A stretch of 64,000 nt of DNA from Utricularia gibba (taxonomy: Eukaryota; Plantae; Magnoliophyta), in the NCBI GenBank assembly GCA_002189035.1, contig NEEC01000004.1, forward strand, positions 3,596,001 to 3,660,000, read 5' to 3'. A program made the translations under genes and the position numbers. The notes below the pieces were generated by a model. That model did not search any database and was not told the DNA's origin. It was given only the letters and a program-made list of their open reading frames with translations. Within the stretch, counting starts at the first letter, position 1, and the number at the start of each line of letters is the position of its first letter. This document shows, in pieces, positions 1 to 49,994 of this stretch.

Positions 1-974
1 ACTAGGACTAACTCAGGACTACAACGAAATACAGTAAAGAAAAGTAACAAGTTTGGATTCGATAGTTTCTGGAATGGAATGGGTGATACCTTGGAACTCT
101 TAAGGGATGTATGCATATCACTAAACAAGCTCACATAAATCAAAAATCATTCAACTAACTCACAAGATCTAGGTCTACCCAGATTCTTGTTTTTCCCCCT
201 AATCTTTGGTCTACCTCTAATTAGGGTTGTTAGTTGGGTTTCACTACTTCCCCCTCCTGGATCTATCCTGCTTTGTTAAGGAAGTAGTGTGACTTATGAT
301 TTATTAGGTCTAAGGATGGATTAGCATATTTCTCCTCTTCTCACCCCAAGGCATCCCCCTGTAAGTGCTTAGCTACTCATGGTAATGGAAAGTAAAACAT
401 CTTCATAGCAGATACTGAGCAATATCTTGGCTACAAATGCTAAACAACAACGAGCAATATGAAGCAAAAGTAGGACAAACACTTCGTTCACATAGGAAAT
501 CCAAATCTAGTCTTAGCTAGGAATAGTAAACATGAAGAACGAAAATAATTTTTCAAGAGAAGCTGTGTTCTTCTAGTTCGTCGTCCCCTCCTTCTTCTTC
601 TCTTAGAAAAATCTCCAGAAACTTCTCTTGAAATCTCCAAAGGGAGATCTCCTTCTCTCTCCAACTTTCCTCCATTTTTGTTCAAAATCTTCCTTTTTCA
701 CCTCCTTGGACTTTGTGTGTACTCTTCTTCAAACTTCTGTCACCTTTCCTGCCACCACACTATTCATACTCGGCTCCCTTGGATTTGTGTTGCGACCCAT
801 GCTGCACTACTCGAAAGGAACTGTTAGAATTGCGATTTAGTCCCAACTAAGACTAAAAGTGCACTCCTACAATACTTATGTGCAAAAATATAGAAACAGG
901 CAATTAAGCTTACTTTTTGTAGCATAAAATGAGTAAATTCCATGCATTGAGCCACTAAAAAATGTGTTATCACA
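1..974 (-). mobile_element. Element-1 family LTR copy A (truncated by window start)
   Basis: Matches 23048-24021 and ends ...GTTATCACA followed by the same ATGCT flank. Confidence 0.9.
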
Positions 975-2029
975 ATGCTATCGGGATTTTGTCATTTTCC
1001 ATTTCAACTACTTTTTCATTTTTCTTGGACACTTCTTTTATTGCTTCAGGTTGGTTTGGGCAATATTAAACATAATATGAGTTGATGCTGTGACACGGAT
1101 TATAATAATTAGAAAACAAATTAAGTTTATAAACAATCAAAATTTGACTTATCAAAAAAATAATAAACAACCAACGTTTAATTTTTTCAATGTTTGACAT
1201 TCATTTTTATTTTATAATTTTATGTAATTTTTACATTTAACTTCTTTATAGGTTAAAGTGAGCAATATATTTGAAAATATTTGATTAAGAGAATCAATAA
1301 TAATAATAAGTTAATTTTATAAACGAATTGTGTATGAAATTGTTTTTTATAATTTTTCTAAACACAAAGATATTTTACATATTTTTAAAGAGGGGTAGAC
1401 TTAAAACTTATTTGCCGAAATTTAAAAATATATATATTATCAATGAAGAATTAATATAAATAAGAATAAAGTGTAAAATTATCTTTTATTAATTGGAATT
1501 AAACTATCTATTCTAAATATGCATGCTATTTTAAATATATATTGGTAAATATATATATTTTCATTATATACTACCTATTATTTAAATACAAAAAATTAAA
1601 TATTTAAAATACTCTTTCAAACGCAAACTGTTTATTTTAAAAAAACTCAGGTAAAATAATCGAGTGTGCCTTAATTGCTGTCTGGAAATTTAAACAATTT
1701 TATGAATTAGAAAAAAAAAAAAACGGAGATGCTTCTTCTTCTTCTTTTTTTGTTTTGTTTTGTTTTAACATGGATTGTGCATGAGACGGCAGGGCACCCC
1801 GCAGATTTGGGGAATGCTGTTTGAACCGTTCGTCATTCCATTTTTCTCTCGACCGATGCTCTTCACTTCTTCTCTCGTTTCTCTGCAATGCATTCCTCAT
1901 TTCTTCTCCATCACCTCGACGCTGAACCTTGTTTCTACCACATTTTCACCTAGAACAAAACCCATTTCTCCAACGGAGTGGTTGCTCTGTTGATCGGGGG
2001 TGCCATCACTCTCGTCTGTGGCCGGCGAT

Positions 2030-3527
2030 ATGGCTTCCGTTAACAACCATGCAATGGACGGCGACCACCCAGATATCGAGAATGGCGCAGATGACTGGCC
2101 CATCGACCCGGATTTCTCCGATCCCTTCGACATTGCCAACACCAAGAAGGCGTCGCGAGAATCGCTCAAGCGTTGGAGGGTAAGATTTCGAGCATCCTGG
2201 TTTTTATTGCAGGAACTCGTGTTTTTCTACCACCCGAACTCCTCTCATGTTTTTATAACAGCAAGCTGCGCTTGTGCTCAATGCTACCCGCCGGTTTCGA
2301 TACACGTTAGATTTGAGAAAAGATGAAGAGCAAGATAAGAGGAGGCGTATGATTAGAGCGCATGCTCAAGTCATTCGGGTGATGAAGTCTAAATGCCATC
2401 AACTACCATTTCATTCCTTTTTAACTTCTTGATGTTAAACTTGCAATTCCATCGTAGGCTGCTTTGCTCTTCAAATTGGCTGGGCAGAGAGCGATAGGTG
2501 CTTCTGTATTCTCTATCTTCTGCTTTTGTGATAATTCGAAAATCATCATCTTTAAATAGGGTTTCATTCAGTTCTAGGTACTTCAGTTTCTCCTCCCTCT
2601 CCAAGTGGGGAGTATGGCATTGCACTTGAGCAGCTTGCTTCAATGAATAAGGACCAGAATGTTTCTGCACTGGAGCAGTATGGAGGGGCAAGATGACTGC
2701 ATCCTTTATACCACTTTCATGTTTTTCTTGCAATGCGTGTACCCCACAAACTAATATCAACACAACTTCAGGTTAAAGGTCTATCAGAGATGCTGAAGAC
2801 AAACTCTGAGACAGGGATTGATGGAGATGATGTATTGGAAAGAAGGAAGGCCTATGGGTCAAATACGTATCCTGTGAAAAAAGGAAGAAGTTTCTTGGTA
2901 ATGATTCATTTGTATTCTATGGCAATAAGTCTTTTGTCTCTTCTATTGTATTTTGGAGCTTTTGTTCACATCTTTTTTTTTTGAACATTCCGTTTCTGCT
3001 CCTTACCCAGTTATTTTTGTGCAGATGTTCCTATGGGACGCTTGGCAAGATTTGACTCTCATTATCTTAATCTTTGCTGCTGTAATATCATTGGTTCTTG
3101 GAATAAAAACTGAGGTTATTTTGCCTTCTCGGAGATTCGACACACTGTTGTCTAGATCATGATGAACCTGAGCTGCAGTCATGCCTAATTTGAGTAATTT
3201 CTGTTGCGTTTATAGGGCATCCAACAAGGATGGTATGATGGGGGAAGCATTGCCTTTGCAGTTTTTCTGGTTATTTTTGTCACAGGTGATTCCAATTTAT
3301 TCTCCATCAAAGTTGCAAACATTCTGTTCTCCAATTTATATTTTCTTTTGACACCGAGGAAGTATTAACTATGAACTGTAATTTTTTAAAAGTGAGGCTC
3401 TTTTCTCAAATTTTTTCAGCCTAATGATTTTTCTGATTGGTGTGTTTGATTCATAAGTGATTTATTTGATTCTATTTTGATTGCATTCATTAATTTAAAA
3501 TTGATCTGTTAGTGATGATGCACATTC
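2030..3527 (+). pseudogene. ACA9: Truncated ACA9-like Ca2+-ATPase copy 1 (exons 1-7 and part of intron 7)
   Basis: [12 protein letters not shown]...[46 protein letters not shown]. Matches 25081-26577 and is cut off in intron 7. Confidence 0.9.
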
Positions 3528-3529
3528 AT

Positions 3530-4276
3530 AAAAATCCACCTGTTGCAGAGTCCACCAAGGCCCTATCTATGTATAGAAGACCATCATAAAAAATACTTGA
3601 TCAATGCATTGGTCTGAAATCCATGGTGTGGACAGGAGCCTAGCAGGTTTTTAAAGCGTTCCCAATATTCATGTAGAGATTCTCCACTGTTTGCTCAATG
3701 TCACTGATCTCCTTCCTTATTCCTCCAGCTTTTGAAGCAGGGAATTATTTGCTGAGAAATACATTCTTCATCCCACTCCAATCTGTGATACTTCCCGGCT
3801 TCAAAGAGTTAAACCATGTTTTTGCACTCCCTTCCAGTGTAAATTGGAATGCCCTCAAACAGATGGCATCCTCAGTCATACCAGCACTCTTAAAAGAGGT
3901 GCAAACAGCAGTCACGTTGTCAAGATGTTCATGGGTTCTCACCCACTTTTCCATAATACTTGGGCAGAAAATTAATCATAGCTGGCTTCAATTCGTTGGC
4001 TGTGTCATCAGAGAACCTAATACACAGCCCTCTGTACGTATGGTCAGCTGCATCAAGCTCATTCAGGGTCTTCTCCTATTCTGCCATATTGAAATTAGTT
4101 TGAGCAACAGCAGCGAGTCTGCTCAACCTTGCTGCTTCTCTCACTCTTGTGCGGTTCTTGCTGATAGTTCTCTCGATTTCTGGATGGAAAACAAGATCAC
4201 CTACACTAGAAGAACGCAAATGCATCAACCGAATCACAAAACAATTAAACACCGCTCCCCGGAAACGGCGCCAATT
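3530..4276 (-). mobile_element. Athila gag 5' fragment, leader and tRNA-Asp PBS (copy 1; PBS 4256-4273)
   Basis: Matches 22114-22860. Encodes MHLRSSSVGDLVFHPEIERT and LRAFQFTLEGSAKTWFNSL (retrotransposon gag motif). Confidence 0.9.
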
Positions 4277-5437
4277 TGATAAACGAAAAATTGTACAAGT
4301 CGTTAATTGCAAATTTTCCTATCAAATAAATTTATAACCTAACCCACATTCAAGTATAAAACAATTATGAGCATAGTGATTAGGGTCGAACACGAAGAGC
4401 AGGTGCTTGTCAAGTGATTAGCCAAAGCATGAAATCAGTGTCATGTTGGTAAAATTGGTCTTAACTAGGACTAACTCAGGACTACAACGAAATACAGTAA
4501 AGAAAAGTAACAAGTTTGGATTCGATAGTTTCTGGAATGGAATGGGTGATACCTTGGAACTCTTAAGGGATGTATGCATATCACTAAACAAGCTCACATA
4601 AATCAAAAATCATTCAACTAACTCACAAGATCTAGGTCTACCCAGATTCTTGTTTTTCCCCCTAATCTTTGGTCTACCTCTAATTAGGGTTGTTAGTTGG
4701 GTTTCACTACTTCCCCCTCCTGGATCTATCCTGCTTTGTTAAGGAAGTAGTGTGACTTATGATTTATTAGGTCTAAGGATGGATTAGCATATTTCTCCTC
4801 TTCTCACCCCAAGGCATCCCCCTGTAAGTGCTTAGCTACTCATGGTAATGGAAAGTAAAACATCTTCATAGCAGATACTGAGCAATATCTTGGCTACAAA
4901 TGCTAAACAACAACGAGCAATATGAAGCAAAAGTAGGACAAACACTTCGTTCACATAGGAAATCCAAATCTAGTCTTAGCTAGGAATAGTAAACATGAAG
5001 AACGAAAATAATTTTTCAAGAGAAGCTGTGTTCTTCTAGTTCGTCGTCCCCTCCTTCTTCTTCTCTTAGAAAAATCTCCAGAAACTTCTCTTGAAATCTC
5101 CAAAGGGAGATCTCCTTCTCTCTCCAACTTTCCTCCATTTTTGTTCAAAATCTTCCTTTTTCACCTCCTTGGACTTTGTGTGTACTCTTCTTCAAACTTC
5201 TGTCACCTTTCCTGCCACCACACTATTCATACTCGGCTCCCTTGGATTTGTGTTGCGACCCATGCTGCACTACTCGAAAGGAACTGTTAGAATTGCGATT
5301 TAGTCCCAACTAAGACTAAAAGTGCACTCCTACAATACTTATGTGCAAAAATATAGAAACAGGCAATTAAGCTTACTTTTTGTAGCATAAAATGAGTAAA
5401 TTCCATGCATTGAGCCACTAAAAAATGTGTTATCACA
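4277..5437 (-). mobile_element. Element-1 family LTR copy B (1161 bp)
   Basis: TG...CA termini, adjacent to the PBS, matches 22861-24021. Confidence 0.92.
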
Positions 5438-6496
5438 ATGCTATCGGGATTTTGTCATTTTCCATTTCAACTACTTTTTCATTTTTCTTGGACACTTCTT
5501 TTTATTGCTTCAGGTTGGTTTGGGCAATATTAAACATAATATGAGTTGATGCTGTGACACGGATTATAATAATTAGAAAACAAATTAAGTTTATAAACAA
5601 TCAAAATTTGACTTATCAAAAAATAATAAACAACCAACGTTTAATTTTTTCAATGTTTGACATTCATTTTTATTTTTATAATTTTATGTAATTTTTACAT
5701 TTAACTTCTTTATAGGTTAAAGTGAGCAATATATTTGAAAATATTTGATTAAGAGAATCAATAATAATAATAAGTTAATTTTATAAACGAATTGTGTATG
5801 AAATTGTTTTTTATAATTTTTTCTAAACACAAAGATATTTTACATATTTTTAAAGAGGGGTAGACTTAAAACTTATTTGCCGAAATTTAAAAATATATAT
5901 ATTATCAATGAAGAATTAATATAAATAAGAATAAAGTGTAAAATTATCTTTTTATTAATTGGAATTAAACTATCTATTCTAAATATGCATGCTATTTTAA
6001 ATATATATTGGTAAATATATATATTTTCATTATATACTACCTATTATTTAAATACAAAAAATTAAATATTTAAAATACTCTTTCAAACGCAAACTGTTTA
6101 TTTTAAAAAAACTCAGGTAAAATAATCGAGTGTGCCTTAATTGCTGTCTGGAAATTTAAACAATTTTATGAATTAGAAAAAAAAAAAAACGGAGATGCTT
6201 CTTCTTCTTCTTTTTTTGTTTTGTTTTGTTTTAACATGGATTGTGCATGAGACGGCAGGGGCACCCCGCAGATTTGGGGAATGCTGTTTGAACCGTTCGT
6301 CATTCCATTTTTCTCTCGACCGATGCTCTTCACTTCTTCTCTCGTTTCTCTGCAATGCATTCCTCATTTCTTCTCCATCACCTCGACGCTGAACCTTGTT
6401 TCTACCACATTTTCACCTAGAACAAAACCCATTTCTCCAACGGAGTGGTTGCTCTGTTGATCGGGGGTGCCATCACTCTCGTCTGTGGCCGGCGAT

Positions 6497-7994
6497 ATGG
6501 CTTCCGTTAACAACCATGCAATGGACGGCGACCACCCAGATATCGAGAATGGCGCAGATGACTGGCCCATCGACCCGGATTTCTCCGATCCCTTCGACAT
6601 TGCCAACACCAAGAAGGCGTCGCGAGAATCGCTCAAGCGTTGGAGGGTAAGATTTCGAGCATCCTGGTTTTTATTGCAGGAACTCGTGTTTTTCTACCAC
6701 CCGAACTCCTCTCATGTTTTTATAACAGCAAGCTGCGCTTGTGCTCAATGCTACCCGCCGGTTTCGATACACGTTAGATTTGAGAAAAGATGAAGAGCAA
6801 GATAAGAGGAGGCGTATGATTAGAGCGCATGCTCAAGTCATTCGGGTGATGAAGTCTAAATGCCATCAACTACCATTTCATTCCTTTTTAACTTCTTGAT
6901 GTTAAACTTGCAATTCCATCGTAGGCTGCTTTGCTCTTCAAATTGGCTGGGCAGAGAGCGATAGGTGCTTCTGTATTCTCTATCTTCTGCTTTTGTGATA
7001 ATTCGAAAATCATCATCTTTAAATAGGGTTTCATTCAGTTCTAGGTACTTCAGTTTCTCCTCCCTCTCCAAGTGGGGAGTATGGCATTGCACTTGAGCAG
7101 CTTGCTTCAATGAATAAGGACCAGAATGTTTCTGCACTGGAGCAGTATGGAGGGGCAAGATGACTGCATCCTTTATACCACTTTCATGTTTTTCTTGCAA
7201 TGCGTGTACCCCACAAACTAATATCAACACAACTTCAGGTTAAAGGTCTATCAGAGATGCTGAAGACAAACTCTGAGACAGGGATTGATGGAGATGATGT
7301 ATTGGAAAGAAGGAAGGCCTATGGGTCAAATACGTATCCTGTGAAAAAAGGAAGAAGTTTCTTGGTAATGATTCATTTGTATTCTATGGCAATAAGTCTT
7401 TTGTCTCTTCTATTGTATTTTGGAGCTTTTGTTCACATCTTTTTTTTTTGAACATTCCGTTTCTGCTCCTTACCCAGTTATTTTTGTGCAGATGTTCCTA
7501 TGGGACGCTTGGCAAGATTTGACTCTCATTATCTTAATCTTTGCTGCTGTAATATCATTGGTTCTTGGAATAAAAACTGAGGTTATTTTGCCTTCTCGGA
7601 GATTCGACACACTGTTGTCTAGATCATGATGAACCTGAGCTGCAGTCATGCCTAATTTGAGTAATTTCTGTTGCGTTTATAGGGCATCCAACAAGGATGG
7701 TATGATGGGGGAAGCATTGCCTTTGCAGTTTTTCTGGTTATTTTTGTCACAGGTGATTCCAATTTATTCTCCATCAAAGTTGCAAACATTCTGTTCTCCA
7801 ATTTATATTTTCTTTTGACACCGAGGAAGTATTAACTATGAACTGTAATTTTTTAAAAGTGAGGCTCTTTTCTCAAATTTTTTCAGCCTAATGATTTTTC
7901 TGATTGGTGTGTTTGATTCATAAGTGATTTATTTGATTCTATTTTGATTGCATTCATTAATTTAAAATTGATCTGTTAGTGATGATGCACATTC
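6497..7994 (+). pseudogene. ACA9: Truncated ACA9-like copy 2 (exons 1-7)
   Basis: Same sequence as copy 1 shifted by 4467. Exon 7 ends at 7752. Confidence 0.9.
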
Positions 7995-7996
7995 AT

Positions 7997-8743
7997 AAAA
8001 ATCCACCTGTTGCAGAGTCCACCAAGGCCCTATCTATGTATAGAAGACCATCATAAAAATACTTGATCAATGCATTGGTCTGAAATCCATGGTGTGGACA
8101 GGAGCCTAGCAGGTTTTTAAAGCGTTCCCAATATTCATGTAGAGATTCTCCACTTGTTTGCTCAATGTCACTGATCTCCTTCCTTATTCCTCCAGCTTTT
8201 GAAGCAGGGAATTATTTGCTGAGAAATACATTCTTCATCCCACTCCAATCTGTGATACTTCCCGGCTTCAAAGAGTTAAACCATGTTTTTGCACTCCCTT
8301 CCAGTGTAAATTGGAATGCCCTCAAACAGATGGCATCCTCAGTCATACCAGCACTCTTAAAAGAGGTGCAAACAGCAGTCACGTTGTCAAGATGTTCATG
8401 GGTTCTCACCCACTTTTCCATAATACTTGGGCAGAAAATTAATCATAGCTGGCTTCAATTCGTTGGCTGTGTCATCAGAGAACCTAATACACAGCCCTCT
8501 GTACGTATGGTCAGCTGCATCAAGCTCATTCAGGGTCTTCTCCTATTCTGCCATATTGAAATTAGTTTGAGCAACAGCAGCGAGTCTGCTCAACCTTGCT
8601 GCTTCTCTCACTCTTGTGCGGTTCTTGCTGATAGTTCTCTCGATTTCTGGATGGAAAACAAGATCACCTACACTAGAAGAACGCAAATGCATCAACCGAA
8701 TCACAAAACAATTAAACACCGCTCCCCGGAAACGGCGCCAATT
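7997..8743 (-). mobile_element. Athila gag 5' fragment and PBS (copy 2; PBS 8723-8740)
   Basis: Matches 22114-22860. Confidence 0.9.
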
Positions 8744-9904
8744 TGATAAACGAAAAATTGTACAAGTCGTTAATTGCAAATTTTCCTATCAAATAAATTT
8801 ATAACCTAACCCACATTCAAGTATAAAACAATTATGAGCATAGTGATTAGGGTCGAACACGAAGAGCAGGTGCTTGTCAAGTGATTAGCCAAAGCATGAA
8901 ATCAGTGTCATGTTGGTAAAATTGGTCTTAACTAGGACTAACTCAGGACTACAACGAAATACAGTAAAGAAAAGTAACAAGTTTGGATTCGATAGTTTCT
9001 GGAATGGAATGGGTGATACCTTGGAACTCTTAAGGGATGTATGCATATCACTAAACAAGCTCACATAAATCAAAAATCATTCAACTAACTCACAAGATCT
9101 AGGTCTACCCAGATTCTTGTTTTTCCCCCTAATCTTTGGTCTACCTCTAATTAGGGTTGTTAGTTGGGTTTCACTACTTCCCCCTCCTGGATCTATCCTG
9201 CTTTGTTAAGGAAGTAGTGTGACTTATGATTTATTAGGTCTAAGGATGGATTAGCATATTTCTCCTCTTCTCACCCCAAGGCATCCCCCTGTAAGTGCTT
9301 AGCTACTCATGGTAATGGAAAGTAAAACATCTTCATAGCAGATACTGAGCAATATCTTGGCTACAAATGCTAAACAACAACGAGCAATATGAAGCAAAAG
9401 TAGGACAAACACTTCGTTCACATAGGAAATCCAAATCTAGTCTTAGCTAGGAATAGTAAACATGAAGAACGAAAATAATTTTTCAAGAGAAGCTGTGTTC
9501 TTCTAGTTCGTCGTCCCCTCCTTCTTCTTCTCTTAGAAAAATCTCCAGAAACTTCTCTTGAAATCTCCAAAGGGAGATCTCCTTCTCTCTCCAACTTTCC
9601 TCCATTTTTGTTCAAAATCTTCCTTTTTCACCTCCTTGGACTTTGTGTGTACTCTTCTTCAAACTTCTGTCACCTTTCCTGCCACCACACTATTCATACT
9701 CGGCTCCCTTGGATTTGTGTTGCGACCCATGCTGCACTACTCGAAAGGAACTGTTAGAATTGCGATTTAGTCCCAACTAAGACTAAAAGTGCACTCCTAC
9801 AATACTTATGTGCAAAAATATAGAAACAGGCAATTAAGCTTACTTTTTGTAGCATAAAATGAGTAAATTCCATGCATTGAGCCACTAAAAAATGTGTTAT
9901 CACA
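8744..9904 (-). mobile_element. Element-1 family LTR copy C (1161 bp)
   Basis: Matches LTR B and LTR E. Confidence 0.92.
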
Positions 9905-10963
9905 ATGCTATCGGGATTTTGTCATTTTCCATTTCAACTACTTTTTCATTTTTCTTGGACACTTCTTTTTATTGCTTCAGGTTGGTTTGGGCAATATTAA
10001 ACATAATATGAGTTGATGCTGTGACACGGATTATAATAATTAGAAAACAAATTAAGTTTATAAACAATCAAAATTTGACTTATCAAAAAATAATAAACAA
10101 CCAACGTTTAATTTTTTCAATGTTTGACATTCATTTTTATTTTTATAATTTTATGTAATTTTTACATTTAACTTCTTTATAGGTTAAAGTGAGCAATATA
10201 TTTGAAAATATTTGATTAAGAGAATCAATAATAATAATAAGTTAATTTTATAAACGAATTGTGTATGAAATTGTTTTTTATAATTTTTTCTAAACACAAA
10301 GATATTTTACATATTTTTAAAGAGGGGTAGACTTAAAACTTATTTGCCGAAATTTAAAAATATATATATTATCAATGAAGAATTAATATAAATAAGAATA
10401 AAGTGTAAAATTATCTTTTTATTAATTGGAATTAAACTATCTATTCTAAATATGCATGCTATTTTAAATATATATTGGTAAATATATATATTTTCATTAT
10501 ATACTACCTATTATTTAAATACAAAAAATTAAATATTTAAAATACTCTTTCAAACGCAAACTGTTTATTTTAAAAAAACTCAGGTAAAATAATCGAGTGT
10601 GCCTTAATTGCTGTCTGGAAATTTAAACAATTTTATGAATTAGAAAAAAAAAAAAACGGAGATGCTTCTTCTTCTTCTTTTTTTGTTTTGTTTTGTTTTA
10701 ACATGGATTGTGCATGAGACGGCAGGGGCACCCCGCAGATTTGGGGAATGCTGTTTGAACCGTTCGTCATTCCATTTTTCTCTCGACCGATGCTCTTCAC
10801 TTCTTCTCTCGTTTCTCTGCAATGCATTCCTCATTTCTTCTCCATCACCTCGACGCTGAACCTTGTTTCTACCACATTTTCACCTAGAACAAAACCCATT
10901 TCTCCAACGGAGTGGTTGCTCTGTTGATCGGGGGTGCCATCACTCTCGTCTGTGGCCGGCGAT

Positions 10964-12461
10964 ATGGCTTCCGTTAACAACCATGCAATGGACGGCGACC
11001 ACCCAGATATCGAGAATGGCGCAGATGACTGGCCCATCGACCCGGATTTCTCCGATCCCTTCGACATTGCCAACACCAAGAAGGCGTCGCGAGAATCGCT
11101 CAAGCGTTGGAGGGTAAGATTTCGAGCATCCTGGTTTTTATTGCAGGAACTCGTGTTTTTCTACCACCCGAACTCCTCTCATGTTTTTATAACAGCAAGC
11201 TGCGCTTGTGCTCAATGCTACCCGCCGGTTTCGATACACGTTAGATTTGAGAAAAGATGAAGAGCAAGATAAGAGGAGGCGTATGATTAGAGCGCATGCT
11301 CAAGTCATTCGGGTGATGAAGTCTAAATGCCATCAACTACCATTTCATTCCTTTTTAACTTCTTGATGTTAAACTTGCAATTCCATCGTAGGCTGCTTTG
11401 CTCTTCAAATTGGCTGGGCAGAGAGCGATAGGTGCTTCTGTATTCTCTATCTTCTGCTTTTGTGATAATTCGAAAATCATCATCTTTAAATAGGGTTTCA
11501 TTCAGTTCTAGGTACTTCAGTTTCTCCTCCCTCTCCAAGTGGGGAGTATGGCATTGCACTTGAGCAGCTTGCTTCAATGAATAAGGACCAGAATGTTTCT
11601 GCACTGGAGCAGTATGGAGGGGCAAGATGACTGCATCCTTTATACCACTTTCATGTTTTTCTTGCAATGCGTGTACCCCACAAACTAATATCAACACAAC
11701 TTCAGGTTAAAGGTCTATCAGAGATGCTGAAGACAAACTCTGAGACAGGGATTGATGGAGATGATGTATTGGAAAGAAGGAAGGCCTATGGGTCAAATAC
11801 GTATCCTGTGAAAAAAGGAAGAAGTTTCTTGGTAATGATTCATTTGTATTCTATGGCAATAAGTCTTTTGTCTCTTCTATTGTATTTTGGAGCTTTTGTT
11901 CACATCTTTTTTTTTTGAACATTCCGTTTCTGCTCCTTACCCAGTTATTTTTGTGCAGATGTTCCTATGGGACGCTTGGCAAGATTTGACTCTCATTATC
12001 TTAATCTTTGCTGCTGTAATATCATTGGTTCTTGGAATAAAAACTGAGGTTATTTTGCCTTCTCGGAGATTCGACACACTGTTGTCTAGATCATGATGAA
12101 CCTGAGCTGCAGTCATGCCTAATTTGAGTAATTTCTGTTGCGTTTATAGGGCATCCAACAAGGATGGTATGATGGGGGAAGCATTGCCTTTGCAGTTTTT
12201 CTGGTTATTTTTGTCACAGGTGATTCCAATTTATTCTCCATCAAAGTTGCAAACATTCTGTTCTCCAATTTATATTTTCTTTTGACACCGAGGAAGTATT
12301 AACTATGAACTGTAATTTTTTAAAAGTGAGGCTCTTTTCTCAAATTTTTTCAGCCTAATGATTTTTCTGATTGGTGTGTTTGATTCATAAGTGATTTATT
12401 TGATTCTATTTTGATTGCATTCATTAATTTAAAATTGATCTGTTAGTGATGATGCACATTC
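10964..12461 (+). pseudogene. ACA9: Truncated ACA9-like copy 3 (exons 1-7)
   Basis: Same sequence as copy 2 shifted by 4467. Exon 7 ends at 12219. Confidence 0.9.
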
Positions 12462-12463
12462 AT

Positions 12464-13210
12464 AAAAATCCACCTGTTGCAGAGTCCACCAAGGCCCTAT
12501 CTATGTATAGAAGACCATCATAAAAATACTTGATCAATGCATTGGTCTGAAATCCATGGTGTGGACAGGAGCCTAGCAGGTTTTTAAAGCGTTCCCAATA
12601 TTCATGTAGAGATTCTCCACTTGTTTGCTCAATGTCACTGATCTCCTTCCTTATTCCTCCAGCTTTTGAAGCAGGGAATTATTTGCTGAGAAATACATTC
12701 TTCATCCCACTCCAATCTGTGATACTTCCCGGCTTCAAAGAGTTAAACCATGTTTTTGCACTCCCTTCCAGTGTAAATTGGAATGCCCTCAAACAGATGG
12801 CATCCTCAGTCATACCAGCACTCTTAAAAGAGGTGCAAACAGCAGTCACGTTGTCAAGATGTTCATGGGTTCTCACCCACTTTTCCATAATACTTGGGCA
12901 GAAAATTAATCATAGCTGGCTTCAATTCGTTGGCTGTGTCATCAGAGAACCTAATACACAGCCCTCTGTACGTATGGTCAGCTGCATCAAGCTCATTCAG
13001 GGTCTTCTCCTATTCTGCCATATTGAAATTAGTTTGAGCAACAGCAGCGAGTCTGCTCAACCTTGCTGCTTCTCTCACTCTTGTGCGGTTCTTGCTGATA
13101 GTTCTCTCGATTTCTGGATGGAAAACAAGATCACCTACACTAGAAGAACGCAAATGCATCAACCGAATCACAAAACAATTAAACACCGCTCCCCGGAAAC
13201 GGCGCCAATT
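12464..13210 (-). mobile_element. Athila gag 5' fragment and PBS (copy 3; PBS 13190-13207)
   Basis: Matches 22114-22860. Confidence 0.9.
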
Positions 13211-14370
13211 TGATAAACGAAAAATTGTACAAGTCGTTAATTGCAAATTTTCCTATCAAATAAATTTATAACCTAACCCACATTCAAGTATAAAACAATT
13301 ATGAGCATAGTGATTAGGGTCGAACACGAAGAGCAGGTGCTTGTCAAGTGATTAGCCAAAGCATGAAATCAGTGTCATGTTGGTAAAATTGGTCTTAACT
13401 AGGACTAACTCAGGACTACAACGAAATACAGTAAAGAAAAGTAACAAGTTTGGATTCGATAGTTTCTGGAATGGAATGGGTGATACCTTGGAACTCTTAA
13501 GGGATGTATGCATATCACTAAACAAGCTCACATAAATCAAAAATCATTCAACTAACTCACAAGATCTAGGTCTACCCAGATTCTTGTTTTTCCCCCTAAT
13601 CTTTGGTCTACCTCTAATTAGGGTTGTTAGTTGGGTTTCACTACTTCCCCTCCTGGATCTATCCTGCTTTGTTAAGGAAGTAGTGTGACTTATGATTTAT
13701 TAGGTCTAAGGATGGATTAGCATATTTCTCCTCTTCTCACCCCAAGGCATCCCCCTGTAAGTGCTTAGCTACTCATGGTAATGGAAAGTAAAACATCTTC
13801 ATAGCAGATACTGAGCAATATCTTGGCTACAAATGCTAAACAACAACGAGCAATATGAAGCAAAAGTAGGACAAACACTTCGTTCACATAGGAAATCCAA
13901 ATCTAGTCTTAGCTAGGAATAGTAAACATGAAGAACGAAAATAATTTTTCAAGAGAAGCTGTGTTCTTCTAGTTCGTCGTCCCCTCCTTCTTCTTCTCTT
14001 AGAAAAATCTCCAGAAACTTCTCTTGAAATCTCCAAAGGGAGATCTCCTTCTCTCTCCAACTTTCCTCCATTTTTGTTCAAAATCTTCCTTTTTCACCTC
14101 CTTGGACTTTGTGTGTACTCTTCTTCAAACTTCTGTCACCTTTCCTGCCACCACACTATTCATACTCGGCTCCCTTGGATTTGTGTTGCGACCCATGCTG
14201 CACTACTCGAAAGGAACTGTTAGAATTGCGATTTAGTCCCAACTAAGACTAAAAGTGCACTCCTACAATACTTATGTGCAAAAATATAGAAACAGGCAAT
14301 TAAGCTTACTTTTTGTAGCATAAAATGAGTAAATTCCATGCATTGAGCCACTAAAAAATGTGTTATCACA
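13211..14370 (-). mobile_element. LTR D: 3' LTR of element 1 and also the 5' LTR of the last array unit
   Basis: PBS and gag lie on its left and the element 3' internal region on its right. It differs from LTR E only by one C in a C-run near 13647. The terminal inverted repeat TGATAAC...GTTTATCA suggests the true end may be 14368. Confidence 0.92.
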
Positions 14371-15232
14371 TTATGCTACAACGACACTAGACTTGTCCTC
14401 AAGTCCTAACTAAAACTAATAGGAGGTAAATAGTCAATGAATCTCGTACAGAGCGATGTGGATGCTTAACATTCAGCTAAAAACGCATGAGTTGTAGGGT
14501 GCTAGTGTGCATGGGAGGGTGTCACTCAAGCATACATGACAATTTCATCTTGAAAGGTGCATTCGAAGATGAAATGAGCAAAAATGGCATGTGCTTACCT
14601 CCAAAGAGTGCTGATTGTCACTACTGTTTTTCTTTTCTTTTCTTTTCATTCTCTCTTTTCCCCCTTTTTTTTTCCTACAGAGATCGACACCAGGGGAATT
14701 TAGAGTTCAACTCAGGTAAACTGTTGCTTCCCCTCTTTGTATGAGACTGTGGGCAATGCACTCTCCTCCTTATTCCTCCAGGGGTGCATTCTACTCCTCT
14801 GAGTTGTTCTTATGACCTCCCTGTGCTCTTTACTCTGCTGTCTACACACGCTTTTTTGTTGTATGTTGCTTTTCAAGACTTGGGTCTCATCGCTTTTCTG
14901 TTGATGATGCTTTTCTTTTTTTGACCCATTTGTTTTTGCTATCTACAAATTTTGTGACTAGTCCCCCATGAAAAATCAACACATGCCAATCTACTAAAAA
15001 AAAATCTTGAATGCACCAATCTGACTACATTTAACATGTTGCTATCTCACAAAAATAATAGAAGGGAAAACATGCTCACTGGTTTATAAACTGGCCATAA
15101 CAAAACTCCTGCATTTCGTGCATCATGAAAAACATCCCATGCTTGTACGAAATTCCTCAACCATTCACAAAATCCTCTTGACCACAATGCCGTACTACCA
15201 AATTACTCCTAATTTAGACTAATGCCATAAAG

Positions 15233-15255
15233 ATAAAAATAAACATAAAAATAAA

Positions 15256-15286
<31 letters not shown>

Positions 15287-15312
15287 TAAAATAAAAATAA
15301 AAATGAAAATAA
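15233..15312. repeat. (AATAAA/TAAAAA)n low-complexity tract in the element-1 3' UTR
   Basis: Directly visible repeat just downstream of the env-like ORF stop. Confidence 0.85.
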
Positions 15313-15333
15313 AGATGAGGCATTGCAACGATG

Positions 15334-17126
15334 TTACTTGATCAGGGAGGAGTCCTTCACTCCCTGTTTCAGTTCTTTCACTTCCCTTAACAAATCCTCA
15401 AGTCTGTCATAAACCATGTCAATTTGCTCTTTGCAGCAGCAGCCCTTTTCTTTCGTTCGGTTTGTGAGTGTTTGAGTAGAATTTCCTCCCTTTTCCTTCA
15501 ATGGGGGTTCTTTCCTGCATAACCCTGCAAGAGACCTAAAGACAAACCCACTCCCTCGTGCCTGAATTAGTCCTGAAGTCTTAAGGAAATGAGCATTTAA
15601 AGGGACAATTTTTTGTTCAACATGAAACAATGTCAATTCTGTGATCCTATCCGCACACAGCACTCTAGCTAAGAATGTGACTACATTACCGAATCTGAGC
15701 TGATTGATGGTTCTACGCCTGTAGTCACGGTTCATCTGTTCTGCTAAAATTGCACCTAGGTTCAAAGATTTTTTGTGCAGAAGACACCACATAACAAACA
15801 GCTCACGCTTATACGAGGAATTGAACCCTATAACACGTCCGAACAGAACAGCAGAAATTAAGAGATGAACATATCTCGTGGCAGGATCAGTGAATAAATC
15901 TGCCTTGGTGCCCTTAGATTTAAACTCGATGACAAACTGATCAGTCAACAATCCATACACCTCCTCAGCATCAAACTCATCAGGATAATCAAATAATGAT
16001 GTAGCAAAAGCATGCGAGTTCACATCATGTTCTGAGCAGAATCCTAGCACAACATTCCATTCAGCAAGAGAGAACGAAAACTCTTTTCCTAGCAATCTAA
16101 ATGTCACAGCAGCAGGTGTCAAAACTGTCTCAGGTTTTTCAAATAAAAAGGTAGCAGCAAATTCATAGGTTAACTCGACATATGCAAGGTAGTTCATGTC
16201 ACACAATAATAACAGATTCGTGCCCTCCAACATAGAATAAACATTCTCAACAATTCCTAATTCAACTAAAATTTCATAATCAATTATATGACTATGTGTG
16301 ATTTATGTTTCTCCTCTCCTGCATGTTTTCCTGAACTTAAAAACAATGGAACCAGGTTAGGTAGATATTTCTCCCATTTTGTCTCAATTTCTACTTCAAC
16401 ATCCTCTTCCTTGTCCAACTCTTCTGCCTCTTGTTCAGGTTCTATTGTTTTCTTGGTTTTACTCCTCATCCTTCTTGCAACAAGGCCTCCATCACCATAT
16501 TCTTCAGTCATTGTTGCAACGTCTGTTGTTGCTTCTTCTCCTCCCTGTTGAACTTGCTCTTGAGTGCTGGGTTACACCTCTATTTCTCTAGCCACTTCTT
16601 CCATCTTTTCTGAAGTGTCCTCAGCACTTGCTGTCATCATTTCCACTTCGGGATTCGTCTACTCCATTTCGTCTACCATGATCTTTTCTGTTGTTGCCTG
16701 TTTGGTGGTTTCTGTTGGCTTCCTTTGGGCCTTTCTCCCTGTCTTTTTCTTTTGATAAACAATCTTCGGTTGCTTATCAGGTGCCTCCTCCATGACCAGT
16801 TTTCCTTTTCCCTTGTAACTCTTCCTCAATGCTTGCAATTTCTGTTGGAGGTCAGGACTAGCAGGAGACTTTAATCGTGGGCTTCTCCTTTCCATCACTG
16901 GAGTTCCTCCTGCTTTCAGAGAGGAAGTTCCACCCGATTTTGATGCATGCCGGAGAGCTTCCACACCCTGAAACGCTTCTTCAGCTGAGGTTGCGACTCT
17001 GGTTTGTTCCTGGTTAGGAGTAATAGTGACTGCCTTTTCAGTTTTCTTGCGTTTGCTGCTTTCAGCAGCGATCTTTCTGTCCGATTTTGCAGCAGCAGCA
17101 CTCTGATGTTGGTGTTTTGCAAGCAT
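15334..17126 (-). pseudogene. Athila extra 3' ORF (env-like / putative plant transposon protein), about 600 codons with 3 in-frame stops
   Basis: ORFs 16659-17162, 16284-16511 and 15334-16233 share one frame. YVELTYEF and FRLLGKEFSFSLAEWNVVLGF motifs are also seen in the element-2 counterpart. Confidence 0.75.
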
Positions 17127-17460
17127 CTTGTGAGATAATTTTTCTGCAACCCTCAAGAACACGATGAAGAGTTTTGAAACAAAGTGAACGTTACAAAGTA
17201 ATTTACCCCCAAATTTTCAAAAGGGTTTGGGGGCAGTTCTGTAAAATCCTAACAGTTAGTCACAACCCTTGTACTTTACTTTCCTATAACCGCAATGCAA
17301 CTCCCCCATTTTGCAAAAGGAACACGACACAGATTCTCCAAAATTACTTCTAGCTAAGTCTAAAAATGCAGAAGTAAAATAACAAGAAAATAAAACTAAC
17401 AGAAATTAAACTTGGGTTGCCTCCCAAGAGCGTCCTTGTTTTTAGTCCTGGACTAGACTT

Positions 17461-20400
17461 TCAGCAAATTCTACGTCGTTTCCATTTTAGAAATTCAACT
17501 TCTTCAGCAAACCTGTTTTGAAGATTTTCATAAAAAATCTTCAACCTATGTCCATTCAAAATAAAACTTGTGTTAGTCCCTCCATCATAAACCTCTACTG
17601 TTCCGTTTGGGAAAACTTCTTTCACTACAAATGGTCCAGTCCAACGAGATTTGAATTTCCCTAGGTGTAACTTCAGTCTGGATTGAAACAGCAACACTTT
17701 TTGACCAACTTCGAAGGACCTCCTGGAAATATGCTTGTCGTGGTAACTTTTAGTCCTTGCTTTGAATAACTTTGAGCTTTCGTATGCATCATTTCTCAGC
17801 TCTTCCAGTTCTGAGAGCTGCAATTTTCTTTGGCTTGCACTAAGACTTTCATCAAGGTTTAGCCTCTTCACTACCCACCAGGCCTTGTGCTCTAATGCAA
17901 CAGGTAACCTGCAGGGTTTTCCATAAACTAGCCTGAATTAAGAGGTCCCAATTGGTGTTTTATACGCTGTTCGGATTGCCCATAAAGCATCCCTCAGTCT
18001 AAGACTCCAGTCCTTCCTGTTCGGGTTTACCACTTTCTCTAAAATCTGTTTAATCTCCCTGTTTGATACCTCCGTCTGGTCATTTGTTTGTGGATGGTAT
18101 GCTGTTGATGGCTTGTACCAAACGTTGAACTGCTTCAATACACTTCTCAAGGCCTGATTATAAAAATGCGTACCTTGGTCACTAATCAGCGCCTTGGGAG
18201 TCCCATATCGCACAAAAATGTTATTACGCAGAAAATTTATCACTGTCTTTGCGTCATCTGTCCTGGTAGGAATGGCTTTAATCCACTTTGAGACGTAATC
18301 AACAGCTACTAAAATATAGTTGTAGCCTGCAGAAGTAGGGAATGGCCCCATAAAATCAATGCCCCAAACATCAAATAATTCACATATCAGGATTCCTTGC
18401 TGAGGCATTTTGTCCCAATTGGATAAATTTCCCACTCTTTGGTATGGCTCACAACCCTTGCAATAAGCGTAACAGTCTCTGAAGATGTGAGGCCAGTAGA
18501 ATCCACAGTCTAAAATTTTCCTGGCTGTACGGTTTGGTCCATGATGGCCACCAAACGGTCCTGCATGACAAGAATTGATAATTTTAGGAATTTCAAACTC
18601 ATGAACACACTTTCTAATGACACCATCATTGCATCTCTTCCAAAGGTAAGGATCGTCCCAAATATAATATTTGGCGTCACTCTTCAGTTTGTTCTTCATG
18701 TGATAATCAATTCCCGGCGGCATCACTCCTGCTGAAACAAAGTTAGCCAAGTCTACAAACCACGGTTCACGAATATTAGTCCTAACTAAGAATAATTGTT
18801 CATCCGGAAATGTTTCAGTGATAGGACTATTATTCTTCAGCCCTTTCATCCTGCTGAGATGGTCAGCGACCATGTTCTCTTTCCCAGGTCTGTCTTTAAT
18901 TTCCACATCAAACTCCTGAACAAGGAGAACCCATCTGATCAATCGTGGTTTGGTCTCCTTCTTCTCCATCAAATGTTTTACTGCTGAATGGTCTATGTAG
19001 ACCACAACTTTGCTCCCGAGAAGATAGGAACAAAATTTCTCCAAAGCAAAAATCACAGCTAAAAATTCTCTTTCAGTCACAGTGTAATTTTTCTGGGCAT
19101 CATCTAAAGTTTTGGAAGCATAAGAAATAACATGATGTTTCCCTTCAATTTTCTGTCCTAAAACCGCCCCTACAGCATGGCTACTAGCATCACACATAAT
19201 TTCGAAATCATACCTCCAGTTTGGTGGTTGAATCACAGGAGTAGTAGTCACAGCCTCTTTTAAGCAATTAAAAGCATTTTTGCATGAATCATCAAAAATA
19301 AATTCCACATCATTATGCAAAAGTCTACTAAGAGGCAAGGCAATCTTAGAAAAATTCTGAATAAATCTTCTATAAAAACCAACATGTCCCAGAAATGATC
19401 TCACACCTTTAACATCAATTGGATACGGTAACTCAGTCATAATTTCGATTTTTGTTTTGTCTACCTCAATTCCCTTCCTAGAAATAACATGGCCAAGCAC
19501 AATTCCATGATCAACCATAAAATGACATTTTTCAGAATTAAGAACAAGATTTTTTTCAACACATTTTCGCAAAACCTAATCCAAATGGTCTAAACATGAC
19601 TCATAATCCTCTCCATACACTGTAAAATCGTTCATAAAAATTTCTATGAAATCCTCACCAAAGTTTGAGAAGATGCTGATCATACACCTCTGGAAGGTAG
19701 CAAGGGCGTTGCACAACCCAAAGGGCATCCTTCTATAGGCATAAGTCCCAAATGGACAGGTAAAAGTAGTCTTATCTTGATCCGTACCTGAAATTGCAAC
19801 TTGGTTATATCCAGAATAACCATCTAAGAAACAATAAAAAGATTTTCTTGCTAATTTTTCGAGCATTTGATCAATGAAAGGTAAGGGGTAATAGTCCTTC
19901 TTGGTCACTTCATTTAATTTCCTATAGTCTATGCATACTCTCCATCCATTTTGAATTCTTTAAGGCACCAGCTCTCCCTTCTCGTTCTCCACCACTGTCA
20001 TACCAGTCTTCTTGCGCACCACATGGATTGGACTCACCCATTCACTGTCTGTGATGGAATAGATAATACCTGCATCATGGAGTTTTACAATTTCCTTCTT
20101 TACCACTTCCATCATATTTAGGTTGAGGCGTCTTTGTGGCTGGCGAACAGGTTTTGCTCCATCTTCTAATAAAATCCTGTGCATACATATAGAGGGAGAG
20201 ATGCCTTCAATATCTGCAAGAGTCCAGCCAATCGCCTTCTTATTCCTTATCAGCACGTCCAATAGTCGCGACTCTTGGTCTAAGCTAAGACTATTTGAGA
20301 TGATAATTGGGTTGTTCATTTCTTCATCCAAGAATGCGTACTTCAGGTGTGTAGGCAGTGGCTTCAGCTTAGCTGTCCTCTCCTCCAGGGTCTTGCCTTG

Positions 20401-22809: not shown

Positions 22810-22839
22810 CAACCGAATCACAAAACAATTAAACACCGC

Positions 22840-22857
22840 TCCCCGGAAACGGCGCCA
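22840..22857 (-). other. Primer-binding site complementary to the tRNA-Asp(GTC) 3' end (TGGCGCCGTTTCCGGGGA, 1 mismatch)
   Basis: Lies 3 nt inside the 5' LTR. Matches the recalled plant tRNA-Asp 3' end UCCCCGGCAACGGCGCCA at 17/18. Confidence 0.9.
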
Positions 22858-22860
22858 ATT

Positions 22861-41652: not shown

Positions 41653-41670
41653 TATTCCCCCACACTTAAA
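41653..41670 (-). other. Polypurine tract of element 2 (TTTAAGTGTGGGGGAATA)
   Basis: Abuts the 3' LTR. A second copy lies at 42441-42460. Confidence 0.85.
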
Positions 41671-44187: not shown

Positions 44188-44476
44188 TGTGGGTCGAAAA
44201 ATCAGAGAATTTCAGGCGAGAGAAGGAAGAATTGGAGCGTAGGCACAACAGCGAAGTGGGGTAACGGTCAGTAAAAATGGGAATGCCAAAAGAGAAAAAG
44301 GGAGATTGAGTGTAGAAACGGTTAAGAGAGTAAGTGGTGGCGTGGGCAGGTGAAAGTAAAGTCACTTGAAGTAGTAGGTGATAAAAACGAGGAAATAGTA
44401 ACGGTTACGAAATTAAAGTCATGGGTTGCCTCCCATGCAGCGCCAATTTACAGTCATTGGCCGACTGTGACATCTG

Positions 44477-49860: not shown

Positions 49861-49970
49861 AAAAATAGAGAAAAACAACAGCAAAACGGAAATAAAAGAA
49901 AAACGAGAAGAAAGAAAGAAAAAGAAAAGAAAAAGAAAAACTATAAACACTAAACACAAAAATACACAAC

Positions 49971-49988
49971 TCCCCGGCAACGGCGCCA
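49971..49988 (-). other. PBS complementary to tRNA-Asp(GTC) (TGGCGCCGTTGCCGGGGA)
   Basis: 18/18 match to the recalled tRNA-Asp 3' end, 6 nt inside the LTR. Confidence 0.92.
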
Positions 49989-49994
49989 AAAATT

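What the first reader, a model, noticed from the sequence alone, without database searches (positions are those of the whole stretch)
1..14370. Amplified chimeric repeat: a retrotransposon LTR fused to the 5' third of an ACA9-like calcium pump gene, in a near-perfect 4467-bp tandem array
Seen: at least three units, each holding an LTR, the ACA9 promoter, exons 1-7, then antisense gag and PBS. They copy segment 22114-26577, which spans the TE/gene boundary, and differ only by homopolymer indels. Inference: a very recent amplification that co-multiplied a host promoter, a regulatory-domain gene fragment and a retroelement promoter beside the intact gene. This is not an ordinary TE nest or gene duplication.
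Basis: partly seen in the sequence, partly recalled or inferred. Interest (0 to 1): 0.85.

Follow-up and report, generated by a model that had tools for sequence, protein, structure and literature searches.

The report
Young tandem retroelement–calcium-pump fragment array
A 4.5-kb piece made of the front end of a retrotransposon plus the promoter and first seven exons of a calcium-pump gene has very recently been copied head to tail beside the intact gene; independent read sets confirm the joint and one plant lacks it, but nothing shows that it does anything.

Summary
Window 1-14378 is a head-to-tail array with a period of about 4467 bp that copies 22114-26577. The copies show 0 substitutions and 12 single-base homopolymer indels. 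At least one of those indels is an assembly error.

Each unit holds three parts:
- 747 bp of antisense tRNA-Asp primer site plus the start of gag;
- the 1161-bp antisense LTR of an Athila-like Ty3/gypsy element;
- 1.06 kb of promoter and coding exons 1-7 (236 aa) of an ACA8/9/10-type Ca2+-ATPase, covering the autoinhibitory domain and TM1-2.

The only new joint links intron 7 to gag, with a 2-bp filler (AT). The LTR itself sits at its natural insertion site and is not fused to the gene.

Contigs built from public reads of two samples of a 2013 study carry exactly this joint. A 2019 sample of another haplotype runs straight through the breakpoint at equal depth, has no joint, and probably lacks the element altogether. 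So the amplification is real DNA, very young and polymorphic.

Copy number and the odd topology are not independently verified. The array sits on the far side of the element's internal region.

The most likely origin is one end-joining event followed by homologous unequal exchange. No function is shown.

The scan noted this same locus before, in this window and the neighbouring one, but not on other DNA. It is a new variant of known kinds and of moderate interest.

The parts
1..3529 (+). Array unit 0, cut by the window start. LTR part 1-974, promoter plus exons 1-7 975-3527 (ATG 2030, exon 7 ends 3285), AT filler 3528-3529.
   Evidence: six homopolymer indels relative to the other copies
3530..7996 (+). 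Array unit 1. Antisense gag start plus PBS 3530-4276, antisense LTR 4277-5437, promoter plus exons 1-7 5438-7994 (ATG 6497, exon 7 ends 7752), AT filler 7995-7996.
7997..12463 (+). Array unit 2. Antisense gag start plus PBS 7997-8743, antisense LTR 8744-9904, promoter plus exons 1-7 9905-12461 (ATG 10964, exon 7 ends 12219). The spliced exons give an open 236-aa N-terminus. AT filler 12462-12463.
12464..14370 (-). Last, incomplete unit: gag start plus PBS (12464-13210) and LTR (13211-14370). The LTR also serves as the 3' LTR of the full element.
14371..22113 (-). Rest of the internal region of the Athila-like Ty3/gypsy element: gag end, protease, RT, RNase H, integrase and an ATHILA ORF-1-like ORF. 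The reading frame is broken into at least 8 pieces. A tRNA-Asp 5'-end-like 15-mer at 14371-14385 stands where a polypurine tract is expected.
22114..22860 (-). Source copy: PBS (22840-22857, tRNA-Asp type) and the first part of gag. 22114 is the left breakpoint of the duplicated segment.
22861..24021 (-). Source copy: 5' LTR of the element (1161 bp, TG...CA).
   Evidence: the X5 contig aligns only from 24020 rightwards, which marks the element's edge
24022..25080 (+). Host DNA between the LTR and the ATG: the promoter and 5' UTR region of the Ca2+-ATPase gene.
25081..26335 (+). Coding exons 1-7: 25081-25230, 25313-25429, 25509-25548, 25623-25738 (GC donor), 25823-25948, 26076-26165, 26267-26335. 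Pfam finds CaATP_NAI in exons 1-2 and Cation_ATPase_N in exons 5-6. The source copy lacks one G at 26290, which is an assembly error.
   Evidence: table 4
26336..26577 (+). Part of intron 7 inside the unit. 26577 is the right breakpoint, 30 bp before exon 8 (which starts at 26608).
26578..31585 (+). Single-copy remainder of the intact Ca2+-ATPase gene, exon 8 to the last exon. It aligns to residues 241-1070 of a 1089-aa ACA10-like protein.

Best explanation
This is a real, very young and polymorphic tandem amplification.

Proposed order of events:
1. An Athila-like Ty3/gypsy element inserted in antisense orientation 1.06 kb upstream of the start codon of an ACA8/9/10-type plasma-membrane Ca2+-ATPase gene. 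The insertion is probably itself polymorphic.
2. One non-homologous end-joining or replication-switch event joined intron 7 of the gene (26577) to a point inside gag (22114) with a 2-bp filler. This made a 4467-bp direct duplication.
3. The identical units then multiplied by unequal homologous exchange.
4. An exchange between LTRs, or the collapse of a larger unit between the 1.9-kb gag+LTR repeats, left the array on the far side of the element's internal region.

Shown: the array, its content, the joint in independent reads, its absence in another haplotype, and zero substitutions.

Inferred: the order of events, the repair pathway, the true copy number and any effect on the gene. Each unit keeps a promoter and an open 236-aa autoinhibitory N-terminus, and it places an LTR so that it points antisense into the exons. 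No expression has been shown.
For: Array, period and zero substitutions.

The same junction three times and nowhere else.

All copy differences are homopolymer indels. The one at 26290 is contradicted by all three read sets, so the copies are effectively identical: and table 4.

The joint 26577->22114 with AT filler is found in contigs of X1 (751-bp contig, 92 nt beyond the joint, no branch to exon 8) and of X2: tables 5, 5c, 8.

Depth, all:
- X2: 18.5 over exons 1-7 against 9.0 over exon 8 onward.
- X1: 10.6 and 4.9 against nothing assembled.
- X5: one 7.1-kb contig crosses 26577 with 17 SNPs at uniform depth 41.6 and shows no joint.
- A further X5 contig stops matching at 24020, the LTR edge, which suggests an empty site.

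The junction has a 2-bp filler, no long homology and no LTR end, which is an end-joining signature.

Element and gene anatomy.

Tandem LTR-retrotransposon structures that vary in unit number through LTR exchange are documented in plants (PMC11899658).
Against: - X1 and X2 match the assembly exactly. They may come from the same plant or line as the assembly, so independence is of method rather than of individual.
- Contig depth is a poor copy-number measure. X2 gives only 2:1, where the assembly implies at least 6:1.
- Short contigs cannot test the order of array, internal region and source unit.
- The left end of the array lies outside the window. I know it only from an unchecked neighbouring note.
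- Polishing of identical repeats may have erased real differences between copies, so 'zero substitutions' may overstate how young the array is.
Confidence: 0.72

Rival explanations
1. Circle route. A 4467-bp extrachromosomal circle (gag start + LTR + promoter + exons 1-7) formed by end joining. It multimerised by rolling-circle replication and re-entered the chromosome by one homologous crossover in the element's other LTR. This would place the array on the far side of the internal region in a single step.
For: - The topology in the window is exactly what a single crossover of a multimeric circle into the left LTR would give.
- Rolling circles and re-insertion of circular DNA are among the proposed routes to tandem arrays (PMC3648361).
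Against: This model predicts that the array's left end is an LTR abutting the old flank, at about -7209 or -11676 in window coordinates. The neighbouring-window note puts the end at about -9862. That is within 9 bp of a gag-side unit start (-9871), not an LTR start. No circle has been observed.
Confidence: 0.12
2. The joint is real, but the assembled arrangement is partly artefactual. The plant may carry a simple array on the gene side of the element, possibly on one haplotype only. The assembler may have joined two haplotypes through the identical 1.2-1.9-kb LTR/gag repeat, or mis-estimated the unit number. That would duplicate the internal region and put the array on the 'wrong' side.
For: - Every local junction type in the window would also exist in a simple array, so short-read contigs cannot tell the two apart.
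- The X2 depth ratio is only 2:1.
- The assembly has many homopolymer errors, six of them in unit 0 alone.
- The array's left end at a gag-side unit start suggests a second copy of the internal region further left.
Against: - Long reads easily span a 1.2-kb LTR, so a gag-LTR-internal path without read support should not normally be assembled.
- X1 data fit many copies: the joint is present, exon 8 is unassembled, and depth relative to the LTR family is 3-10 times that of X5.
Confidence: 0.2
3. Reverse-transcription route. A read-in or read-through transcript covering the gene flank, LTR and gag start was copied with template switches, and the multimeric cDNA was inserted as a tandem.
For: - Insertion of tandem structures made during retrotransposition has been proposed for tandem LTR elements (PMC11899658).
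- The introns are kept, which fits an antisense transcript.
- Each unit is bounded by LTRs and keeps a primer binding site.
Against: - Every unit has the same breakpoint and the same AT filler. Repeated independent template switches would not reproduce that.
- The array is contiguous with its own source locus rather than inserted elsewhere with a target duplication.
- The element's reading frames are broken.
Confidence: 0.04
4. The whole array is an assembly artefact with no basis in the DNA.
For: Perfect identity except for homopolymer indels is what an assembler would make from repeated use of the same reads.
Against: The joint sequence, with its filler, is present in contigs made from other read sets of two samples. 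Those samples also show excess depth over exons 1-7.
Confidence: 0.03

Closest known systems
Tandem LTR-retrotransposon structures with shared LTRs (rice, Arabidopsis, almond, cotton; PMC11899658)
   Same: LTRs alternate with intervening segments, and neighbours share an LTR. The element is a gypsy element. Presence is polymorphic between accessions. Unequal LTR exchange is a proposed cause.
   Different: Here only the first 747 bp of the internal region is kept in the repeated units. The rest is replaced by 2.56 kb of host flank carrying a promoter and seven exons, through a non-homologous joint. Only one unit keeps the full internal region.
Long-monomer satellites born from an LTR plus genomic DNA, for example the 4.7-kb Sobo repeat of wild potato (as cited in PMC3648361)
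   Same: A monomer of 4-5 kb that combines gypsy LTR sequence with other genomic DNA. It lies at a single locus and was amplified recently.
   Different: Sobo spans about 360 kb in pericentromeric heterochromatin. This array is about 14-29 kb, lies among genes, and still sits beside the source copy, so it would be an earliest stage at most.
Ordinary tandem segmental or partial gene duplication by end joining followed by unequal crossing-over
   Same: One illegitimate joint, head-to-tail copies, and expansion by homologous exchange. The gene copies are truncated and keep their promoter.
   Different: The unit boundary lies inside a transposon. That transposon's LTRs have additionally recombined, so the array and the source unit are separated by the element's internal region.
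Autoinhibited type IIB Ca2+-ATPases of plants (ACA8/9/10 group)
   Same: The intact gene aligns along nearly the full length of a 1089-aa ACA10-like protein. It has the CaATP_NAI and Cation_ATPase_N domains.
   Different: The amplified copies encode only the regulatory N-terminus and the first two membrane helices, so they cannot pump. Orthology to ACA9 specifically was not tested.

Membership tests
Tandem segmental duplication / nascent long-monomer tandem repeat | Head-to-tail copies with one and the same junction in every unit | tested here: met
   three identical junctions, period about 4467 bp
Tandem segmental duplication / nascent long-monomer tandem repeat | The junction exists in sequencing reads that did not go through this assembly | tested here: met
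   the joint with AT filler is in contigs of X1 and X2; it is absent in X5
Tandem segmental duplication / nascent long-monomer tandem repeat | Excess dosage of the repeated part over the flanking single-copy part | tested here: inconclusive
   X2 gives 18.5 against 9; X1 gives 10.6/4.9 against nothing assembled. These are contig mean depths only, and the tool warns they are not copy numbers.
Tandem LTR-retrotransposon with shared LTRs | Alternating LTRs and complete internal regions of one element family | tested here: not met
   the repeated units keep only 747 bp of the internal region and then switch to host DNA
Tandem LTR-retrotransposon with shared LTRs | Target-site duplication flanking the whole structure | not testable with these tools
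   The left end lies outside the window.
Athila-clade Ty3/gypsy element | Domain order gag-protease-RT-RNase H-integrase, plus an extra downstream ORF of ATHILA type | tested here: met
   Retrotrans_gag, RVT_1, RT_RNaseH, Integrase_H2C2 and rve in that order on the minus strand. ATHILA ORF-1 scores 25.5 bits against a cutoff of 20.2. The protease match is weak.
Athila-clade Ty3/gypsy element | LTRs with TG...CA ends, a primer binding site next to the 5' LTR, and a polypurine tract before the 3' LTR | tested here: inconclusive
   TG...CA ends and a TGGCGCCGTTTCCGGGGA site are present. The tRNA-Asp assignment rests on my memory of the tRNA sequence. There is no purine tract; a tRNA-Asp 5'-like 15-mer stands in its place.
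Plant autoinhibited Ca2+-ATPase (type IIB, ACA8/9/10 group) | N-terminal autoinhibitory domain plus P-type ATPase core over the full length | tested here: met
   CaATP_NAI (31.2 bits in exon 2) and Cation_ATPase_N.: alignment to residues 35-1070 of P0062.: P0062 is named ACA10-like.
Plant autoinhibited Ca2+-ATPase (type IIB, ACA8/9/10 group) | Orthology to ACA9 rather than to ACA8 or ACA10 | not tested
   The labelled relatives retrieved were seeded by an ACA10-like protein. The N-terminus is 58-72% identical to them. Only a motif remembered from Arabidopsis ACA9 ([22 protein letters not shown]) points to ACA9.
Array derived from extrachromosomal circular DNA | Detection of the circle, and an array end at the crossover repeat | not testable with these tools
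   No circular-DNA data are available. The unchecked note places the left end at a gag-side unit start, against the prediction.

The most novel reading that the evidence does not exclude
Each unit may be a working LTR-bounded transcription unit: LTR, primer site, gag start, then antisense exons 7-1 and the promoter of the pump gene, ending in the next LTR. The array would then be both a source of antisense or small RNA, or of a free autoinhibitory N-terminus, that tunes the neighbouring Ca2+ pump gene in a copy-number-dependent way between individuals, and a caught-in-the-act first step of host-gene capture by an LTR retrotransposon.
Probability: 0.06. Interest if true: 0.8.

Novelty: new variant of a known kind. 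Interest (0 to 1): 0.42.

Why it matters
The locus shows a tandem array at birth. One illegitimate joint is still visible, the source copy lies next door, the copies carry no substitutions, and some plants lack the array.

It links two phenomena that are usually described apart: tandem LTR-retrotransposon structures and partial gene duplication. It also offers a concrete locus for studying how long-monomer repeats start and how LTR elements might come to enclose host gene fragments.

If the truncated copies or LTR-driven antisense RNA are expressed, copy number could modulate a Ca2+ pump of the group needed for pollen tube function. That would make the locus a natural dosage series.

As it stands it is a well-documented structural variant without a shown effect.

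Tried and rejected
- Tandem Repeats Finder reported nothing because its longest period is 500 bp. Self-BLAST was used instead.
- My first reading of 12464-14378 and 22114-24027 as a plain 1914-bp LTR pair was wrong. Reading the minus strand showed the repeat runs past the LTR into the primer site and gag.
- A multiple alignment that included the short last unit misaligned and flooded the output. It was redone region by region.
- ARAGORN found no tRNA gene in the window to check the primer site against.
- Attempts to learn what lies left of the window failed.
- The representative search with a 56-aa exon mostly returned fragments. One full-length protein (P0062) served as the exon-mapping reference.
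- ACA9 orthology could not be tested because a spliced protein cannot be handed to the search tools by reference.
- Considered and rejected: integrase-mediated origin of the joint. The breakpoint is inside gag, not at an LTR end.
- Considered and rejected: independent template switches. The filler is identical in all units.
- Considered and rejected: a pure assembly artefact. The joint is present in other read sets.
Full report
**1. What is in the sequence**

A self-comparison of the window aligns 1-9910 to 4464-14378 at 99.89% identity, with no mismatches and ten gaps. The segment 22114-26577 aligns to three places in the array, again without a single mismatch. Unit starts lie at 3530, 7997 and 12464, giving a period of about 4467 bp. 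The array ends at 14378.

Tandem Repeats Finder missed the array only because its longest period is 500 bp.

A region-by-region alignment of the copies finds twelve differences. All are one-base changes in homopolymer length, and six of them are in the first, cut unit.

One of these differences is a missing G at 26290 in exon 7 of the source copy. All three read sets that cover the place contradict it (table 4). These differences therefore look like assembly consensus errors, and the copies are in effect identical.

**2. Anatomy of the unit**

Reading the minus strand shows that the 1914-bp repeat 22114-24027 is not simply an LTR. It holds:
- an LTR of 1161 bp (24021 down to 22861, TG...CA);
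- three spacer bases;
- the site TGGCGCCGTTTCCGGGGA (22857-22840);
- a leader and the first part of gag, down to 22114.

I recognise the primer site from memory as the tRNA-Asp type.

The stretch 14371-22113 carries, on the minus strand, Retrotrans_gag, a weak aspartic protease match, RVT_1, RT_RNaseH, integrase, and a last ORF that matches ATHILA ORF-1. This is an Athila-like Ty3/gypsy element of about 11.6 kb. Its reading frame is broken into at least eight pieces.

To the right of the LTR lie 1059 bp of host DNA and then a Ca2+-ATPase gene. Exon mapping against a 1089-aa protein from the representative search (P0062) gives seven coding exons inside the unit, spanning 25081-26335. Exon 8 starts at 26608 and the gene runs on to about 31585. 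P0062 is named ACA10-like in Gossypium.

Pfam finds the Ca2+-ATPase N-terminal autoinhibitory domain across exons 1-2 and Cation_ATPase_N in exons 5-6. The spliced exons of array unit 2 give an open 236-residue N-terminus that ends after the second membrane helix.

The fragment is about 22% of the protein rather than a third.

**3. The one new joint**

The only junction that does not exist in the source locus joins intron 7 (26577, 30 bp before exon 8) to gag (22114). Two extra bases, AT, lie between them (table 5c). Alternatively it can be read as four more intron bases with a 2-bp loss.

There is no long homology at the joint and no LTR end. This is the scar of end joining or a replication switch, not of integrase or homologous recombination. 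The LTR itself is at its normal insertion site, so 'LTR fused to the gene' is not an apt description.

**4. Is it real DNA?**

Eight public runs hold the stretch or part of it. All are kept as contigs only. I laid four of them on 22050-28000.

- **X1 and X2 (two samples of a 2013 study).** Both contain the joint '26577 goes back to 22114' with the AT filler.
- **X1.** A 751-bp contig runs from exon 5 through the joint, 92 bases into gag, with no branch towards exon 8. Nothing to the right of 26626 is assembled. Exons 1-7 stand at depths 10.6 and 4.9.
- **X2.** The contig over exons 1-7 (depth 18.5) stops exactly at 26577. From there one path leads to exon 8 (a 5-kb contig, depth 9.0) and one into the joint.
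- **X5 (a 2019 study).** A 7.1-kb contig crosses 26577 with 17 substitutions relative to the window. Depth is 41.6 on both sides and there is no joint. Another X5 contig matches only from 24020 rightwards, and 386 of its bases do not match the LTR. Because 24021 is the last base of the LTR, this looks like an empty site, so the element insertion itself is probably polymorphic.

Reads with the junction exist, and depth over exons 1-7 exceeds that of later exons in the carriers but not in the non-carrier.

Caveats:
- X1 and X2 match the window exactly and may come from the assembled line.
- Contig mean depth is a poor copy-number measure, as the tool itself warns.
- X2's ratio of 2:1 is far below the 6:1 or more that the assembly implies.
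- When depth is normalised to the LTR family in the same run, exons 1-7 in X1 lie about 3-10 times above the X5 level, and in X2 about 1-2 times. This may mean the unit number differs between the two samples, but the estimate is rough.

**5. Extent and topology**

An unchecked note from the neighbouring window (s1-285355) gives the array 11,863 letters ending at my position 2000. That puts its start near -9862, within 9 bp of a predicted unit start (-9871). If so, the array has about 5.4 units plus the source copy.

The array lies to the left of the element's internal region, while the source unit lies to its right. The last array unit stops at the LTR end, and that LTR serves as the element's 3' LTR. 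A simple tandem duplication would put all copies on the gene side. Three routes could give the observed order:
- **(a)** An unequal homologous exchange between the element's far LTR and an array LTR, or the collapse of a larger duplicated unit between the 1.9-kb gag+LTR repeats.
- **(b)** Integration of a multimeric 4.47-kb circle by one crossover in the far LTR.
- **(c)** A mis-join of two haplotypes through the identical repeat.

Route (b) predicts that the array's left end is an LTR next to the old flank. The reported left end falls at a gag-side unit start instead, which fits (a) or (c) and suggests a second internal copy further left. I could not read that sequence. Short contigs cannot test the order, because every local junction is shared by the alternative arrangements.

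**6. Age**

About 18.8 kb of copies in the window show no substitution. Assume 1.3e-8 substitutions per site per year, a rate commonly used for plant LTR dating that I quote from memory. The 95% upper bound is then roughly 10^4 years. This holds only if polishing has not homogenised the copies. Presence in some samples and absence in another fits that age.

**7. What it may do**

Nothing is shown. By structure, each unit keeps 1.06 kb of promoter and an open reading frame for the autoinhibitory, calmodulin-regulated N-terminus with two membrane helices. That frame would run into intron 7 and stop after 27 more codons.

Each unit also places an LTR so that its transcript would run through the primer site and gag start into the antisense strand of exons 7-1 and end in the next LTR. 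Antisense or small-RNA effects, or a free regulatory domain, are therefore conceivable. Earlier notes proposed this (s1-257880). Another note reports an expressed 'half-pump' elsewhere in this genome (s1-299269).

No RNA run on record holds the stretch. The element's own frames are broken, and the native plus-strand priming motif is absent from the chimeric units except for six bases. Mobilisation of the unit is therefore unlikely.

**8. Comparison with what is known**

Tandem LTR-retrotransposon structures with shared LTRs are common and polymorphic in plants. Unequal LTR exchange and insertion of pre-formed tandems are both discussed as origins (PMC11899658). The present array shares the alternating, LTR-sharing build. 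It fails the defining feature of complete internal regions, because after 747 bp the unit switches to host DNA.

Long-monomer satellites that combine a gypsy LTR with genomic DNA are also known. One example is the 4.7-kb Sobo repeat of wild potato (about 360 kb; cited in PMC3648361). The present locus resembles a much smaller, earliest stage in a gene-rich setting. An O-fucosyltransferase gene and an auxin-repressed-type gene lie in the same window.

Partial gene duplication by end joining followed by unequal crossing-over is ordinary.

I therefore file this as a new variant of known kinds. The gene belongs to the ACA8/9/10 group. 'ACA9' in particular was not tested: the N-terminus is 58-72% identical to ACA8/10-labelled proteins, and only a remembered motif points to ACA9.

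**9. Verdict**

- Observation: confirmed.
- Interpretation: partly supported. The amplification is real, recent and polymorphic. The 'fusion' and the 'not ordinary' claim are overstated, and function is untested.
- Confidence that this is a genuine recent tandem amplification with the stated anatomy: about 0.9.
- Confidence in the full best explanation, including end joining followed by homologous exchange: 0.72.
- Interest: moderate, 0.42.

Noticed in passing
window 14371-14385 (minus strand GTCGTTGTAGCATAA, abutting the 3' LTR): Where a polypurine tract should be, the element has a 15-mer that resembles the 5' end of tRNA-Asp, the same tRNA its primer site matches. The tRNA sequence is from my memory. 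Earlier notes report the same motif in other elements of this genome.
   Followed up: partly
window 26290 (exon 7 of the intact gene): The source copy has GGGG where the three array copies and all three read sets have GGGGG. The assembly therefore puts a false frameshift into the intact pump gene.
   Followed up: yes
window 24020-24021: A contig of run X5 matches the window only from 24020 rightwards, and 386 of its bases do not match the LTR. This is a probable empty site, so the Athila-like insertion upstream of the pump gene is polymorphic.
   Followed up: partly
window 24022-24027: The six host bases next to the 5' LTR (minus sense TAGCAT) repeat part of the tRNA-like motif that abuts the 3' LTR. 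This may be chance, target choice or an odd cDNA end.
   Followed up: no
window 40345-51302; also 57069-57741: A second Athila-like element lies on the minus strand. Its LTRs are 1309 bp with 5 mismatches, it has a tRNA-Asp-type primer site next to 49994, and a purine-rich tract before its 3' LTR. A diverged fragment of the same LTR (83-88% identity) lies at 57069-57741.
   Followed up: partly
window 25739: Intron 4 of the pump gene appears to use a GC donor (GG|GCAAGA) rather than GT.
   Followed up: no
window 32091-32750 (minus strand); 60288-60959 (plus strand): Neighbouring host genes: an O-fucosyltransferase-family exon (PF10250) just downstream of the pump gene, and a dormancy/auxin-associated protein match (PF05564). 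The array therefore lies in gene-rich DNA and not in heterochromatin.
   Followed up: partly
run X1 against X2, window 24040-26577: Relative to the LTR family depth in the same run, exons 1-7 are several-fold more abundant in sample S1 than in S2. The unit number of the array may differ between the two samples.
   Followed up: partly
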